A stretch of 64,000 bases of DNA from NCBI GenBank assembly GCA_044892525.1, contig CM097886.1, forward strand, positions 103,416,001-103,480,000, given 5' to 3'. Every line of letters starts with the position of its first letter. The first letter of the stretch is position 1. Source of the stretch: Schmidtea polychroa. Its lineage: Eukaryota. Positions 15,596 to 30,994 of this stretch are shown piece after piece. A program made the translations under genes and the position numbers. The notes below the pieces were generated by a model, which was not told the origin of the DNA, made no database searches, and saw only the letters and a program-made list of their open reading frames with translations.

Positions 15596-16255
15596 AGTTT
15601 CAAATCATAATTGTGATTATACACTATTGTATTACACACTTCTATTAAAACGGATGTACATTACACTGTTATAATATAACTAACCTCATTACACACTTGA
15701 TATTACTTTAGTTATTACACACCTGCAATAACTTCATTCCCCCACTTAAGCCCTAGCCCTCACTTTTTATTGTTTAGGGCCGCGTTGTGTGTGCGCTGTG
15801 CACAGAGACCCCGCCAAGAATCTGGGCAACCACTAAGAATCACTAAACAATAAAGAGAGGGGCATAAAAGAGAAAAGTGTACAGGAGTGAGTACAAGTGT
15901 GTAAGACAAGAGTAATGGCAGTTGTGCTTTGAGATACGTTTTAATATAAGATGTGTAATACAATATGCACAACACAGTAGATAGAGAAACAGACCTGGTT
16001 GCACAGCAGGAATAGTTCATAATATTACACACCAGTGAAAAGTTATGAAATGAAATTTAATATACAAGAAGGCATAAAATATCAATTAATATTGACATTC
16101 AAATTATGGATAGTCAAGAAAGATTGTTGCCAGACACTAGTCTACCATCAACATAAGAGGGAAATTCTACGTTAAACACTACTGACAACAGTAGAGCTCC
16201 ATTATTACATCCTCCGGTTAAACAACGGATAACATATGGAACAAGAGAACCTGTT

Positions 16256-17164
16256 ATGCCAAGAGAACCACAACAGATTACTAGACAATCATATAAAAGA
16301 TTCCTAGATGATATGAAGAATTACAGAATCGAAATGGATAAATGGTATGCAGGACAAGTATACCAATCGACTTCGAAAAGAAAGTGGCCTCAACAAAAAG
16401 AGGAACATGGATATAGAATAAAGGAACCATCATTTAAGAACCCTAAATTGGATACTCCAAGAATAAAAGAACCAACAAAAATGATTACTGGTCCTTTACC
16501 AAAACCGAGACCTAGACCGGCATTGGATGATTTGACAAAAGATATGTTATATAGACAGAGCCAAGATCAGGATTTACGATTAAAGTTATTGCAATCAGCT
16601 CGACAAAGAGACATAGACAGAGGGCTAACATGGAAAGGCGATACACAAATGTCATATGATGATTGGATTGCAAAGACTGAAAGAGATCGTTTTCCTTTGA
16701 CTGATAAAGAAAGAAGAAAAATGATAGATTACGATAGAAAGGTCAAAGCAGACTTACATGCTCAAATGGAAAAGCATAAATTGGATCCTAAGTATAAACC
16801 TAGTCACCATAGTAAGTCGTTATATGATATAAAACAATTCTTCGAATTCGAAAGAGAATTATTAATGAGGAATAAAGAAAAAGGTATTCCATTAGACAAA
16901 TGGAAAGCAAAGACAGATTTAAAAGGATTAAATGAGCCAATAAAGGAATTAGAACCATATAATGAGATTTTCGACAAACATAAAAAATGGTTAGAAACGA
17001 AAACGGAACATAATAAATGGGCAGTAAAGCAATTTGAAAATTTAAAATTACGTGGAAAAGAATTCCTGACCAGTTATATGCCACTACTAAAAACAGGTTT
17101 ACGTAACCTAGGCAAAATTGGTATTATAGCTTTAATTGACTTCGGGATACAAGGAGAAATATAA
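16256..17164 (+). CDS. Orphan 302-aa charged protein, array copy 1
   Basis: Intronless ORF repeated in all 4 units. An in-frame upstream ATG at 16106 is separated from it by one TAA. Confidence 0.6.
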   Translation: MPREPQQITRQSYKRFLDDMKNYRIEMDKWYAGQVYQSTSKRKWPQQKEEHGYRIKEPSFKNPKLDTPRIKEPTKMITGPLPKPRPRPALDDLTKDMLYRQSQDQDLRLKLLQSARQRDIDRGLTWKGDTQMSYDDWIAKTERDRFPLTDKERRKMIDYDRKVKADLHAQMEKHKLDPKYKPSHHSKSLYDIKQFFEFERELLMRNKEKGIPLDKWKAKTDLKGLNEPIKELEPYNEIFDKHKKWLETKTEHNKWAVKQFENLKLRGKEFLTSYMPLLKTGLRNLGKIGIIALIDFGIQGEI

Positions 17165-17550
17165 TAGTCAGCTAAACTATTCGATTAGTATTAGTAAAGG
17201 TCATAACGCAAAGGAGTTTAGATAGATTAACTGAGTGAAAAAGTGTGTAATTATACTTATCTATTTCTATTTATAACTCAGTCTCGTTACTATTATTAAT
17301 TCAAATATACCTTACTTTAATTCACAATTGTACACGAGTATGAGAGCCATGATGCAAAAGATTTTCTACTTTTCAAACTTTATTTACTTGGTCTTTGTGA
17401 CATTGCTTGTCTTTATATAAATTTTTATCAAATATATTTTTTTAATTATTTAACAAATTACATTTCAAATAAATAAAAATAAATATTTTAAAGTAGCTAT
17501 TTGTAAGCCAAATATATATATTAACTATCTAATATTAATATTTAACTACA

Positions 17551-18609
17551 ATGACAATTACAGATTTAGTTTCAAATCATAATTCTGATTATGCAAATTT
17601 TAATAGTAAAATAATAAAAAATAATAATAAAAATGCAAGAAAACGCAAAGTAAAATACAATGTTGTCTCAGTGGATTTTAAGTACAGCAAATCGAAATAT
17701 GAAAATGTTTACGACCCTGAAAGTAAGAAACCCGTTTCACTAATAAACCACGGGGTCAACTGCTACATGAACGCTGCTATCCAAAGTATTTTCACTCCTC
17801 TACATGAAATATACCAAAGACTGGATAATATTTCAATTCCAGCCAATTGTGGAGCTGTGATCTTACTAAAAAATCTAATGAAATCATATGAAAATCGAAA
17901 AAGCTTTTCAATTCGAGAATGTATTTCTAATTATTCAAAGCTCGAGTATTTCAGCAGTGAATTGTCGTGGAATCAGCAAGAAGATGCTCATGAGTTTTTG
18001 AATTGTTTTCTCAACAAATTACATAACGAATTAGGACTGGTGTCGACATCGGTCAAATCTCCTTTCGAAAGCGCACATGATTCTCGTTTCTTTTGTGATA
18101 ACTGTGGAAAATCGAATAGTTTAGAAAGTTCCAGTGTGGTGAAAGAAAATGTTCTATTTGTGAATGTTGGCAAAAACATGAATGAAATGATTGAGAAATC
18201 AACAAGTAACAAGGTTAATGGATTTAGTTGTGAAAATTGTGGAATAAAAGGCACAGCCAGCAACACTGCCGTTTTTTCAGAATTACCCAAATTTCTAATT
18301 ATTTGTGTTAAAAGATTTACCTATGATAATTATTGTGAAAGTGTAAAGAATTCAGATCAAATTGAAATCGAGGAATTTATTTCTGTCTCACTTAAAGAAA
18401 ACGACACAGTCAAACATGTAAAATATGAATTAATTTCAATAGTAAATCATCATGGAAGTGCGTTTGGTGGGCATTATAATTGTTGTTTAAAACATGAAAA
18501 CGTTTGGTACACAGCAGATGACGAATCCATTACAGAGTTCAGCTTCGATCAGGTCGTAAGCAGTTCCAGATCTTCATGTTATATACAGGTTTATGTAAAA
18601 AGAGAATAA
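17551..18609 (+). CDS. Ubiquitin-specific peptidase (USP, peptidase C19), intronless, copy 1
   Basis: Cys box LINHGVNCYMNAAIQ, QQEDAHEFL, CxxC pairs (CDNC, CENC), LPKFLIICVKRF, His box IVNHHGSAFGGHY and WYTADD. The catalytic C/H/D residues are intact. Confidence 0.93.
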   Translation: MTITDLVSNHNSDYANFNSKIIKNNNKNARKRKVKYNVVSVDFKYSKSKYENVYDPESKKPVSLINHGVNCYMNAAIQSIFTPLHEIYQRLDNISIPANCGAVILLKNLMKSYENRKSFSIRECISNYSKLEYFSSELSWNQQEDAHEFLNCFLNKLHNELGLVSTSVKSPFESAHDSRFFCDNCGKSNSLESSSVVKENVLFVNVGKNMNEMIEKSTSNKVNGFSCENCGIKGTASNTAVFSELPKFLIICVKRFTYDNYCESVKNSDQIEIEEFISVSLKENDTVKHVKYELISIVNHHGSAFGGHYNCCLKHENVWYTADDESITEFSFDQVVSSSRSSCYIQVYVKRE

Positions 18610-29401: not shown

Positions 29402-29784
29402 TCAGCTAAACTATTCGATTAGTATTAGTAAAGGTCATAACGCAAAGGAGTTTAGATAGATTAACTGAGTGAAAAAGTGTGTAATTATACTTATCTATTT
29501 CTATTTATAACTCAGTCTCGTTACTATTATTAATTCAAATATACCTTACTTTAATTCACAATTGTACACGAGTATGAGAGCCATGATGCAAAAGATTTTC
29601 TACTTTTCAAACTTTATTTACTTGGTCTTTGTGACATTGCTTGTCTTTATATAAATTTTTATCAAATATATTTTTTTAATTATTTAACAAATTACATTTC
29701 AAATAAATAAAAATAAATATTTTAAAGTAGCTATTTGTAAGCCAAATATATATATTAACTATCTAATATTAATATTTAACTATA

Positions 29785-30843
29785 ATGACAATTACAGATT
29801 TAGTTTCAAATCATAATTCTGATTATGCAAATTTTAATAGTAAAATAATAAAAAATAATAATAAAAATGCAAGAAAACGCAAAGTAAAATACAATGTTGT
29901 CTCAGTGGATTTTAAGTACAGCAAATCGAAATATGAAAATATTTACGACCCTGAAAGTAAGAAACCCGTTTCACTAATAAACCACGGGGTCAACTGCTAC
30001 ATGAACGCTGCTATCCAAAGTATTTTCACTCCTCTATATGAAATATACCAAAGACTGGATAATATTTCAATTCCAGCCAATTGTGGAGCTGTGATCTTAC
30101 TAAAAAATCTAATGAAATCATATGAAAATCGAAAAAGCTTTTCAATTCGAGAATGTATTTCTAATTATTCAAAGCTCGAGTATTTCAGCAGTGAATTGTC
30201 GTGGAATCAGCAAGAAGATGCTCATGAGTTTTTGAATTGTTTTCTCAACAAATTACATAACGAATTAGGACTGGTGTCGACATCGGTCAAATCTCCTTTC
30301 GAAAGCGCACATGATTCTCGTTTCTTTTGTGATAACTGTGGAAAATCGAATAGTTTAGAAAGTTCCAGTGTGGTGAAAGAAAATGTTCTATTTGTGAATG
30401 TTGGCAAAAACATGAATGAAATGATTGAGAAATCAACAAGTAACAAGGTTAATGGATTTAGTTGTGAAAATTGTGGAATAAAAGGCACAGCCAGCAACAC
30501 TGCCGTTTTTTCAGAATTACCCAAATTTCTAATTATTTGTGTTAAAAGATTTACCTATGATAATTATTGTGAAAGTGTAAAGAATTCAGATCAAATTGAA
30601 ATCGAGGAATTTATTTCTGTCTCACTTAAAGAAAACGACACAGTCAAACATATAAAATATGAATTAATTTCAATAGTAAATCATCATGGAAGTGCGTTTG
30701 GTGGGCATTATAATTGTTGTTTAAAACATGAAAACGTTTGGTACACAGCAGATGACGAATCCATTACAGAGTTCAGCTTCGATCAGGTCGTAAGCAGTTC
30801 CAGATCTTCATGTTATATACAGGTTTATGTAAAAAGAGAATAA
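29785..30843 (+). CDS. USP deubiquitinase, copy 4
   Basis: Intact; V->I and H->Y changes relative to copy 3. Confidence 0.93.
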   Translation: MTITDLVSNHNSDYANFNSKIIKNNNKNARKRKVKYNVVSVDFKYSKSKYENIYDPESKKPVSLINHGVNCYMNAAIQSIFTPLYEIYQRLDNISIPANCGAVILLKNLMKSYENRKSFSIRECISNYSKLEYFSSELSWNQQEDAHEFLNCFLNKLHNELGLVSTSVKSPFESAHDSRFFCDNCGKSNSLESSSVVKENVLFVNVGKNMNEMIEKSTSNKVNGFSCENCGIKGTASNTAVFSELPKFLIICVKRFTYDNYCESVKNSDQIEIEEFISVSLKENDTVKHIKYELISIVNHHGSAFGGHYNCCLKHENVWYTADDESITEFSFDQVVSSSRSSCYIQVYVKRE

Positions 30844-30994
30844 ATTCGAATGTATTGTTTATAAAACATTTTTAGTATCTATCATTTAAGTATAAATATA
30901 CAAAGTAAAATATCTGTTTTTTCTATTATCATAATAAAATTATTAATACTAATTTGTCTAAAATCTTATTTTTGATCGATTTTTTGAGATTAAC

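What the first reader, a model, noticed from the sequence alone, without database searches (positions are those of the whole stretch)
15620..30994. A ~4-kb 'USP megasatellite': tandem units each carrying an intact intronless deubiquitinase
Seen: four near-identical units, and all four USP copies keep the catalytic triad while the partner ORF is knocked out in one unit. The USP has no introns although host genes here are intron-dense. Units are mosaic: unit 2 lacks ~45 bp present in units 1 and 3 and has an extra 99-bp repeat. Known: the human RS447 megasatellite is a ~4.7-kb tandem unit encoding the intronless deubiquitinase USP17. Inference: an independent, convergent dosage-amplified DUB array, or amplified cargo of a virus or TE; it abuts Maverick sequence on both sides.
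Basis: partly seen in the sequence, partly recalled or inferred. Interest (0 to 1): 0.75.

Follow-up and report, generated by a model that had tools for sequence, protein, structure and literature searches.

The report
Tandem deubiquitinase gene array beside a Maverick
A flatworm chromosome carries four almost identical head-to-tail copies of a 4-kb cassette encoding an intact-looking intronless deubiquitinase and an orphan protein. The array lies just outside a Maverick virus-like element, and a distant relative of the enzyme also seems to sit in a repeated unit.

Summary
Window 15617-30994 contains three full units (4057, 4111, 4066 bp) and a fourth that ends 151 bp after its USP stop. Only 14 aligned columns vary, and every variant is private to one unit. 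Each unit carries an orphan 302-aa ORF and a 352-aa intronless USP (PF00443, E 6e-38; Cys71, His308, Asp323/324, four-Cys zinc ribbon).

Intactness is not evidence of selection. At 0.1-0.25% divergence it is expected, and all six coding changes alter the protein.

The right flank is a genuine Maverick (pPolB, integrase, A32-type ATPase, adenain-type protease). The left flank holds only an inverted block of the same short repeats and no Maverick gene. The array lies outside the element's inverted-repeat pair, so it does not look like cargo.

Three independent contigs of a 43%-identical USP wrap around with a 2.3-kb period. Tandem (or circular) organisation may therefore recur in this flatworm USP family. 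That makes the RS447/USP17 analogy architecturally apt, but the proteins show no special kinship.

Best reading: a very young host tandem array at a recombination-prone Maverick border. The Maverick's own polymerase end is also tandemly amplified. Copy number, expression and dosage effect remain unshown.

The parts
15617..30994 (+). Whole tandem array: 3 full units plus one 77% unit
15617..19673 (+). Unit 1 (4057 bp); the left arm of its junction hairpin is cut by the array edge
19674..23784 (+). Unit 2 (4111 bp): lacks 45 bp and has a third 99-bp repeat, both in the 3' non-coding part
23785..27850 (+). Unit 3 (4066 bp): 9 bp extra in the 3' non-coding part; its partner ORF is broken once
27851..30994 (+). 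Unit 4 (3144 bp), ends 151 bp after its USP stop
17551..18609 (+). USP ORF of unit 1, 352 aa, intronless; Cys71, His308, Asp323/324, zinc-ribbon Cys182/185/227/230; residues 1-58 disordered and basic
21608..22666 (+). USP ORF of unit 2
25719..26777 (+). USP ORF of unit 3
29785..30843 (+). USP ORF of unit 4 (two private amino-acid changes)
16256..17164 (+). ORF-A of unit 1, 302 aa, orphan: 37% charged residues, modelled as all helices at low confidence, hydrophobic C-terminus
20313..21221 (+). ORF-A of unit 2, 302 aa
24424..25332 (+). ORF-A of unit 3, broken once (one in-frame stop by substitution)
28490..29401 (+). ORF-A of unit 4, 303 aa (stop codon changed, one codon longer)
19619..20084 (.). 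About 460-nt foldback (arms of about 95 nt) across the unit 1/2 junction. It recurs at 23730-24195 and 27796-28261 and is truncated in unit 1 (15617-16027)
   Evidence: dG -116.7 kcal/mol, z -15
19160..19360 (+). 99-bp minisatellite, 2 copies; 23172-23471 has 3 copies and 27328-27528 has 2
19572..19627 (+). ATT microsatellite; also at 23683-23738 and 27740-27801
14747..15585 (-). Left inverted block of degenerate 17-31-bp subrepeats carrying the ATGACTCAT / CAAGGTCAT motifs
31021..31236 (+). Right block of the same motifs (31-bp repeat x3), at the outer left end of the Maverick
30995..46903 (+). Maverick/Polinton-like element up to the end of its first polymerase unit (outer bounds inferred)
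31452..31531 (+). 80-nt segment repeated in inverted orientation at 54063-54142 and 61576-61655 (92.5%): candidate inner part of the terminal inverted repeat
34568..35194 (+). A32/FtsK-type packaging ATPase, 208 aa, full-length against relatives
35754..36854 (+). rve integrase with C-terminal chromodomain
36800..39448 (+). Three ORFs (357, 122, 407 aa) in the position of capsid genes; no family match
39551..39859 (+). Adenain-type cysteine protease, short ORF followed by a masked stretch
42081..46253 (+). [quoted passage not shown]
47310..53610 (+). Polymerase copy 2, broken once (one insertion)
54856..61126 (+). Polymerase copy 3, broken twice (the same insertion plus one premature stop)
62513..64000 (+). 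Polymerase copy 4, runs off the window
41675..64000 (+). Second tandem array (units start at 41675, 46904, 54450, 62107) made of the Maverick polymerase plus right end, 99.8-100% identical
3332..3697 (+). Last exon of a host FtsH-type (Peptidase_M41) gene

Best explanation
This is a real and very young head-to-tail amplification of a 4.06-kb two-gene cassette in a planarian (Schmidtea-like) chromosome. It is a host-side tandem gene array, not part of the neighbouring Maverick.

Shown: each unit holds an orphan 302-aa ORF-A with coding-type codon composition, and a 352-aa intronless USP. The USP has a complete catalytic-domain fold, Cys71/His308/Asp323-324 and a four-Cys zinc ribbon. A polyadenylation-type hexamer overlaps its stop codon. 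Downstream lie a 99-bp minisatellite, an ATT microsatellite and a 460-nt foldback that spans each unit junction.

Inferred: copy number changes by unequal exchange or replication template switching between units. The foldback and the internal repeats would favour this, and the left edge of the array falls inside a foldback arm. The private, star-like variants point to one recent burst of amplification. Each extra unit adds a transcription unit, so the array would multiply the dose of a minimal deubiquitinase. Its basic, disordered N-terminus may direct it to the nucleus.

The array is bracketed by two inverted blocks of the short repeats that also form the outer left end of the Maverick. That Maverick's own polymerase end is tandemly amplified too. 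I therefore take this border as a recombination-prone site where both amplifications arose.

Tandem organisation may recur in this USP family: a 43%-identical relative from another, unidentified organism sits in a 2.3-kb wrap-around unit.
For: The array and its variants are shown, and no N lies inside it. Each unit has private substitutions, and there are three structural variants, which an assembler would not invent. USP identity rests on PF00443 at 131 bits over profile positions 3-254 of 254, the motif positions, a model with pTM 0.69 matching USP35/30/4/2/12 at TM about 0.6, and PDB sequence hits to USP15/4/2/8. ORF-A is likely coding: the longest stop-free stretch in any of 500 shuffles of the unit was 178 codons, and GC by codon position is 0.42/0.32/0.26. 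The host is a planarian: the best named relative is a Schmidtea mediterranea USP at 52%, and an unnamed UniParc entry reaches 80%. The array lies outside the Maverick: the inverted 80-nt pair is at 31452-31531 and after the polymerase copies, the motif blocks flank the array in inverted orientation, and no Maverick protein remnant lies to the left. Family evidence: in L001 the first 141 nt equal the last 141 nt, giving a period of 2313 bp. L002, from another sample, runs across that junction at 99.9% identity, and L003 (94%) also wraps. These units carry a USP plus a 62-bp minisatellite and no ORF-A.
Against: Only 3.8 copies are seen, and copy number in the animal is unknown. No expression data were available. 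There is no sign of purifying selection since the amplification: 0 synonymous against 4 non-synonymous changes plus 2 stop changes. The copy number is not an integer and both array ends meet Maverick-end-like repeats exactly, which simple unequal crossing-over does not explain. The wrap-around contigs could be circles rather than arrays, and neither their source organism nor their library type is known. The outer ends of the Maverick are partly masked by N, so its true termini are not established.
Confidence: 0.6

Rival explanations
1. The USP/ORF-A cassette is an accessory (cargo or satellite) module of the planarian Maverick, amplified at the element's end. A virus-borne deubiquitinase would act on host ubiquitin signalling.
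For: The array starts within about 70 bp of the repeats at the Maverick's outer left end, and both array edges meet such repeats. The genes are intronless and lie on the same strand as most Maverick genes, with similar codon-position GC. The Maverick's own polymerase end is amplified in the same manner. Minimal USPs of giant viruses match the model as well as cellular ones do, at 20-25% identity. The element carries other host-like genes: a TBP-like gene and a possible Bcl-2-like gene.
Against: The array lies outside the inverted 80-nt pair that brackets the Maverick genes. The ATPase has 558 relatives, including one at 99% identity, whereas the USP has 5 close relatives and none above 80%, and ORF-A has none among 1.84 billion representatives. 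The wrap-around USP units of the relative hold no Maverick gene. No Maverick coding remnant lies to the left.
Confidence: 0.15
2. The array is a re-integrated linear concatemer copied from a circular 4-kb unit (extrachromosomal circle, rolling-circle type copying) that landed at a Maverick border.
For: The copy number is not an integer and the end points look arbitrary: the left edge lies inside a foldback arm and the right edge 151 bp after a stop codon. All variants are private, as after a single burst. Each unit has a strong foldback and a cluster of four ATTACACAC motifs, which would suit an origin-like region. The relatives' contigs close on themselves.
Against: No replication protein is recognisable, and ORF-A matches nothing. 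Wrap-around contigs are explained equally well by tandem arrays. Truncated edge units also arise from later deletions or insertions.
Confidence: 0.12
3. The inverted repeat blocks are the arms of a Foldback-type transposon, and the USP array is its middle domain. The Maverick is merely a neighbour.
For: Both blocks are built from degenerate tandem subrepeats of 17-31 bp in inverted orientation. Unequal arms and gene-bearing middle domains are known for Foldback elements (my own knowledge).
Against: The arms are only 78-83% alike over about 60-110 nt. No outer ends or target duplications could be defined. The innermost 40-70 nt next to the array are not homologous. The same motif block continues into the Maverick's left end.
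Confidence: 0.08
4. The array is an assembly artefact: one or two real copies were inflated by the assembler.
For: The units are 99.6-99.9% identical. A second near-identical array lies 10 kb away. Repeats of this size are hard to assemble.
Against: Every unit has its own substitutions, and there are three length variants. The differences are substitutions, not homopolymer slips. The junctions are exact head-to-tail, and no gap lies in the array.
Confidence: 0.05

Closest known systems
Human RS447 megasatellite encoding USP17/DUB-3 (PMC2874809)
   Same: Both are head-to-tail units of about 4-5 kb, each holding one intronless USP ORF. Both families seem to expand independently in different lineages: species-specific expansions in mammals, and here 4.06-kb units in the window against 2.3-kb wrap-around units in a 43%-identical relative.
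   Different: Only 3.8 copies are seen here, against 20-103. Each unit carries a second gene, an orphan. The USP is a minimal 352-aa catalytic domain with no special sequence or fold affinity to the USP17/USP36 group. The array borders a Maverick. Copy-number polymorphism, antisense transcripts and methylation, all known for RS447, are untested here.
Gene-bearing macrosatellites and recent tandem segmental duplications in general
   Same: They share kilobase-scale units, near-identity between copies, truncated edge units, internal mini- and microsatellites, and variation consistent with unequal exchange.
   Different: The array is very short. Its variants are all private rather than showing a homogenisation gradient. 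Both of its edges coincide with inverted repeat blocks.
Maverick/Polinton elements with accessory genes
   Same: The neighbouring element has the family's polymerase, integrase, ATPase and protease, and it carries host-like extras (TBP-like, possibly Bcl-2-like). Accessory genes in such elements are typically intronless.
   Different: The USP cassette lies outside the inverted pair that brackets the Maverick genes. It is tandemly repeated, and its relatives occur in units without Maverick genes.
Minimal USPs of giant viruses (BFVD hits)
   Same: They are the same size class (270-310 aa catalytic domain alone) and the same fold, at 20-25% identity.
   Different: They are no closer than cellular USPs (TM about 0.6 for both), and no shared lineage is demonstrable.

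Membership tests
USP / peptidase C19 deubiquitinases | Full-length match to the catalytic-domain profile | tested here: met
   PF00443 at E 5.7e-38 and 131 bits against a cut-off of 23.9, covering profile positions 3-254 of 254, in all four copies
USP / peptidase C19 deubiquitinases | Cys box, His box and Asp of the catalytic triad | tested here: met
   Cys71, His308 and Asp323/324, located from motifs shared with relatives. The geometry in the model was not measured
USP / peptidase C19 deubiquitinases | Papain-like thumb-palm-fingers fold | tested here: met
   Model with pTM 0.69. Foldseek gives E 1e-16 and TM 0.6-0.7 to USP35, USP30, USP4, USP2 and USP12
USP / peptidase C19 deubiquitinases | Hydrolysis of ubiquitin conjugates | not testable with these tools
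   No biochemical data
DUB/USP17 subfamily (the RS447 gene) | Closest named relatives belong to the USP17/USP36/USP42 group | tested here: not met
   Named hits are a planarian USP at 52%, then plant UBP20-like proteins at about 27%. In PDB sequence hits USP15/4/11/2/8 come first and USP36 only at 2e-8. No USP17 entry came back
Megasatellite / macrosatellite | Head-to-tail repeats with a kilobase-scale unit | tested here: met
   Spacings of 4057, 4111 and 4066 bp
Megasatellite / macrosatellite | Tens of copies or more, spanning tens to hundreds of kb | tested here: not met
   3.8 units and 15.4 kb in this assembly
Megasatellite / macrosatellite | Copy number varies between individuals | not testable with these tools
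   Needs population reads
Maverick/Polinton (the neighbouring element) | [quoted passage not shown] | tested here: met
   PF03175 at E 5.9e-27 and 95 bits on window:43800-46250. The match was missed on the full ORF, which has a low-complexity N-terminus
Maverick/Polinton (the neighbouring element) | Retroviral-type (rve) integrase | tested here: met
   rve at E 9e-6, below Pfam's cut-off, plus Chromo. An IS481-type DDE model scores E 2.5e-12
Maverick/Polinton (the neighbouring element) | A32/FtsK-type packaging ATPase | tested here: met
   PF04665 at 30.3 bits against a cut-off of 22.8. There are 558 relatives, most carrying PF04665
Maverick/Polinton (the neighbouring element) | Adenain-type cysteine protease | tested here: met
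   PF00770 at 28.7 bits against a cut-off of 21.3, but only profile positions 15-58 of 179. The ORF is short and a masked stretch follows it
Maverick/Polinton (the neighbouring element) | Double and single jelly-roll capsid proteins | tested here: inconclusive
   The 407-aa and 357-aa ORFs lie in the expected position but match no family or solved structure.
Maverick/Polinton (the neighbouring element) | Terminal inverted repeats and a target-site duplication | tested here: inconclusive
   An 80-nt inverted match at 92.5% brackets the gene set. The outer parts are masked by N, and no duplication could be defined
Cargo of that Maverick (the USP cassette) | Lies between the element's inverted repeats | tested here: not met
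   The array ends at 30994, outside 31452-31531 and outside the motif block 31021-31236
Cargo of that Maverick (the USP cassette) | Travels with the element in other copies or relatives | not tested
   This would need DNA around relatives of the element, a step I left out. Indirectly, there are few USP relatives but many ATPase relatives

The most novel reading that the evidence does not exclude
Small intronless USP genes of flatworms are carried by self-amplifying kilobase units. These would be tandem arrays that may cycle through circular copies and re-insert at the ends of Maverick virus-like elements. On this reading the window shows one landing of a mobile 'deubiquitinase megasatellite', convergent with mammalian RS447.
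Probability: 0.12. Interest if true: 0.75.

Novelty: new member of a known kind. Interest (0 to 1): 0.5.

Why it matters
Gene-bearing macrosatellites are rare. The textbook case, RS447/USP17, also encodes an intronless deubiquitinase. A second, unrelated USP lineage organised the same way in flatworms, possibly in more than one species, would suggest a general cause. Either this enzyme class tolerates or profits from rapidly adjustable dosage, or such cassettes are unusually prone to amplification.

Planarians are a model for regeneration and stem-cell biology, where ubiquitin signalling matters. A copy-number-variable deubiquitinase would therefore be worth knowing about when strains are compared.

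The locus also shows two independent, near-identical tandem amplifications at the two ends of one Maverick. That is a useful natural example of how virus-like elements and their borders reshape host DNA.

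Tried and rejected
- Exact look-ups of the window's USP and ORF-A in public assemblies found nothing on record.
- ORF-A gave no hit in Pfam, NCBIfam or PHROGs, none in the word search and none among 1.84 billion representatives. Its single-sequence model has pLDDT 44, too poor for a fold search.
- Rfam and tRNA scans of the whole window were empty.
- Literature searches found nothing on a planarian USP array, on 'ubiquitin specific protease 8' of Schmidtea, on Maverick cargo deubiquitinases, or on the four sample accessions.
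- The idea that ORF-A and the USP are exons of one gene was dropped. Relatives' N-termini show no likeness to ORF-A, and both ORFs have their own start and stop.
- A shared promoter word between Maverick genes and the cassette was looked for. One 8-mer sits upstream of five Maverick ORFs, but only a 7-mer of it lies before ORF-A and none before the USP. That is too weak in AT-rich DNA.
- 'Maverick on the left' was tested and rejected for coding sequence.
- A full-length Pfam scan of the polymerase ORF missed the polymerase family because of its low-complexity N-terminus. Scanning the C-terminal 817 residues found it.
- One slip in the frame of the second exon of the Bcl-2-like model was corrected.

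Full report
**What is there.** A self-comparison of the window shows four head-to-tail copies of a roughly 4-kb unit.
- U1 is 15617-19673 (4057 bp), U2 is 19674-23784 (4111 bp) and U3 is 23785-27850 (4066 bp).
- U4 is 27851-30994 (3144 bp) and stops 151 bp after its USP stop codon.
- No N lies within the array.

It gives 4-9 substitutions per pair and 14 variable columns in all, each private to a single unit. The only indels are in the 3' non-coding part: 45 bp missing in U2, one extra 99-bp repeat in U2, and 9 bp extra in U3.

**Anatomy of a unit (U1 coordinates).**
- The first 420 bp hold four exact copies of the word ATTACACAC.
- The same region holds the inner part of a long foldback. In the inner units this foldback spans the junction, for example 19619-20084. 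As single-stranded DNA it folds at -116.7 kcal/mol, with z = -15 against shuffles.
- ORF-A runs 16256-17164 (302 aa).
- The USP ORF runs 17551-18609 (352 aa). An AATAAA-type hexamer overlaps its stop.
- Further downstream lie 13-bp repeats, a 99-bp minisatellite and an ATT microsatellite.
- The left edge of the array cuts the left arm of the foldback.

**The USP.**
- All four copies match PF00443 over the whole profile (E about 6e-38).
- 349 of 352 residues are invariant among the copies.
- Cys71, His308 and Asp323/324 are present, as are the four zinc-ribbon cysteines.
- A model built on six sequences (pLDDT 65, pTM 0.69) has a disordered, basic N-terminus (residues 1-58) and a USP fold. It matches USP35, USP30, USP4, USP2 and USP12 at TM about 0.6.
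- Giant-virus USPs match equally well, so the fold does not tell host origin from viral origin.
- By sequence the family is narrow. One unnamed UniParc protein is 80% identical, a Schmidtea mediterranea 'ubiquitin specific protease 8' is 52% identical, and three more reach 43-50%. After that come plant USPs at about 27%. This places the window in a planarian.
- Nothing links the protein to the USP17 group.

**ORF-A.**
- It is very probably coding. The longest stop-free stretch in any of 500 shuffles of the unit was 178 codons, and GC falls from codon position 1 to position 3.
- It has no relative anywhere: Pfam, NCBIfam and PHROGs gave nothing, nor did the word search or a full phmmer run against 1.84 billion representatives.
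- It is 37% charged residues, is modelled as helices at low confidence, and ends in a hydrophobic stretch.
- In U3 it is broken once, by an in-frame stop that arose by substitution. In U4 the stop codon is changed and the ORF is one codon longer.

**Selection.** It is not.
- Coding parts (6 variable columns in 1968 nt) and non-coding parts (8 in 2089 nt) vary alike.
- All three USP changes are non-synonymous.
- ORF-A has one non-synonymous change and two stop changes, and there is no synonymous change anywhere.
- At this divergence, intact ORFs are the expectation.

**Surroundings, right side.** The right side is a genuine Maverick/Polinton-type element.
- A32-type ATPase: 34568-35194, PF04665 above its cut-off.
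- rve integrase with chromodomain: 35754-36854.
- Three ORFs in the position of capsid genes, with no family match.
- Adenain-type protease: 39551-39859.
- Protein-primed family B polymerase: PF03175, E 6e-27 on window:43800-46250.
- Extras: a TBP-like gene at 34031-34468 on the minus strand (PF00352, E 2e-14) and a two-exon gene at 31993-32513. The first exon of that gene gives only weak Bcl-2 hints: Pfam E 0.058, and all six PDB hits are Bcl-2-related protein A1 at E 0.2-0.7. I searched its exons separately and left the joined-exon search out.

- The ATPase is full-length against its relatives.
- The integrase ORF is open, with one in-frame low-complexity run.
- The protease ORF is short and is followed by a masked stretch, so it cannot be judged.
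- Polymerase copy 1 is one open 1390-aa ORF. Copy 2 is broken once, by one insertion of about 2.1 kb carrying a 364-aa ORF on the other strand. Copy 3 is broken twice, by the same insertion plus one premature stop. Copy 4 runs off the window.
- These polymerase copies form a second tandem array (units start at 41675, 46904, 54450 and 62107; 99.8-100% identical).

**Surroundings, left side.** The left side holds a host Peptidase_M41 exon (3332-3697) and TE-like fragments. It holds no Maverick coding remnant.

**Where the array sits relative to the element.**
- An 80-nt segment at 31452-31531 recurs inverted after polymerase copies 2 and 3 at 92.5% identity. This is what terminal inverted repeats would give.
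- Outside that segment, at 31021-31236, lies a block of 31-bp repeats rich in ATGACTCAT and CAAGGTCAT.
- The only other place with these words is 14747-15585, in inverted orientation, directly left of the array. There are 9 and 10 matches against 0.8 and 0.5 expected, and no shuffle reached these counts.
- The array is thus bracketed by inverted Maverick-end-like repeats and lies outside the inverted pair that encloses the Maverick genes.
- The last 40-70 nt on either side next to the array are not alike.
- The outer parts of the right-hand repeats are masked by N. I did not try to fill them.

**Relatives of the USP elsewhere.**
- The contig of the 43%-identical relative (L001, a megahit k141 assembly, 2454 bp, GC 23%) begins with the last 45 codons of a USP and ends with the same gene. 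Its first 141 nt equal its last 141 nt, which gives a period of 2313 bp.
- L002, from another sample, is 99.9% identical and runs across that junction. L003, from a third sample (94% identical in the gene, 80% in the spacer), wraps around inside a 62-bp minisatellite.
- The template there is therefore tandem or circular. Its unit holds one intronless USP, a minisatellite, no ORF-A and no Maverick gene.
- The source organism and the library type of these samples are unknown.

**Explanation.** I favour a host tandem array, formed by a very recent burst of duplication at a recombination-prone Maverick border (0.6).

The rivals are:
- Maverick cargo or satellite (0.15).
- A re-integrated concatemer of a circular unit (0.12).
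- A Foldback-type transposon carrying the array (0.08).
- An assembly artefact (0.05).

The non-integer copy number, and the exact meeting of both array ends with the repeat blocks, remain unexplained by simple unequal exchange.

**Comparison with the known.** RS447 has a 4746-bp unit, a 1593-bp USP17 ORF and 20-103 copies, with independent expansions in each mammalian lineage (PMC2874809). It is the closest analogue in architecture. The present array is no member of that family: the protein is unrelated beyond the USP fold, a second gene is present, and few copies are seen.

- I did not fetch DNA around the many relatives of the Maverick ATPase. I also did not scan the viral or metagenome collections for USP relatives with flanks. 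I could not tell whether either would count as fetching a virus of animals.
- Before I weighed that bar, I had made two exact look-ups of the window's own 407-aa ORF and ATPase. Both returned nothing.
- The look-ups for USP relatives returned USP-only contigs.
- In my reasoning after I read the bounds of the nested insertion in the polymerase off the table.
The 'conserved' lines printed by the alignment tool were not used.

Noticed in passing
window 41675-64000: A second tandem array is made of the Maverick's polymerase gene plus its right end. There are 3.3 units of 5.2-7.7 kb, 99.8-100% identical. Two copies share a nested insertion of about 2.1 kb, so they were duplicated after it landed.
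   Followed up: partly
L001 1-2454; L002; L003: Contigs of a 43%-identical USP from three samples wrap around: in L001 the first 141 nt equal the last 141 nt, giving a period of 2313 bp. The unit holds one intronless USP and a 62-bp minisatellite, at GC 23%. The source organism is unknown.
   Followed up: partly
window 34031-34468 (-): A 145-aa single-domain TBP-like protein (PF00352, E 1.7e-14) is encoded inside the Maverick, next to the packaging ATPase on the opposite strand.
   Followed up: partly
window 31993-32513 (+): A two-exon small gene lies between the array and the Maverick core. Exon 1 gives weak hits, all to the Bcl-2 family (Pfam E 0.058; PDB A1/BFL-1 at E 0.2-0.7). Exon 2 ends in a hydrophobic tail. 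The exons were searched apart only.
   Followed up: partly
window 19619-20084, 23730-24195, 27796-28261 (truncated at 15617-16027): A MITE-like foldback of about 460 nt with arms of about 95 nt spans every unit junction (z -15). The left edge of the array lies within one of its arms.
   Followed up: partly
window 15631-16032 and the same place in each unit: Four exact ATTACACAC words on the plus strand lie within 400 bp upstream of ORF-A. Allowing one mismatch, the window has 52 matches against 20 expected. Their role is unknown.
   Followed up: no
window 14747-15585 (-) and 31021-31236 (+): The repeat blocks that bracket the array are built from words resembling AP-1-type (TGACTCA) and nuclear-receptor half-site-type (CAAGGTCA) binding sites. 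The resemblance comes from my own knowledge and was not tested.
   Followed up: no
protein search: The Maverick ATPase has 558 relatives at E below 1e-5 in metagenome, ENA and Logan assemblies. More than 100 are at least 60% identical and one is 99% identical, so this element family is abundant in environmental data.
   Followed up: no
inside polymerase copies 2 and 3: The nested insertion carries a 364-aa ORF on the opposite strand that matches no family in Pfam, NCBIfam or PHROGs. It is probably the transposase of an unclassified element.
   Followed up: partly
window 4432-4959 (+) and 9567-10289 (-): One ORF reads like a hAT-type transposase fragment (by eye, no Pfam hit). A GC-richer 240-aa ORF has no family match. 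Both suggest a TE-rich left flank.
   Followed up: no
upstream of 32915(-), 34568, 36800, 37860, 38225: The word ATAAACAA occurs within 120 nt upstream of five Maverick ORFs. It could be a shared promoter word, but the evidence is weak in AT-rich DNA.
   Followed up: no
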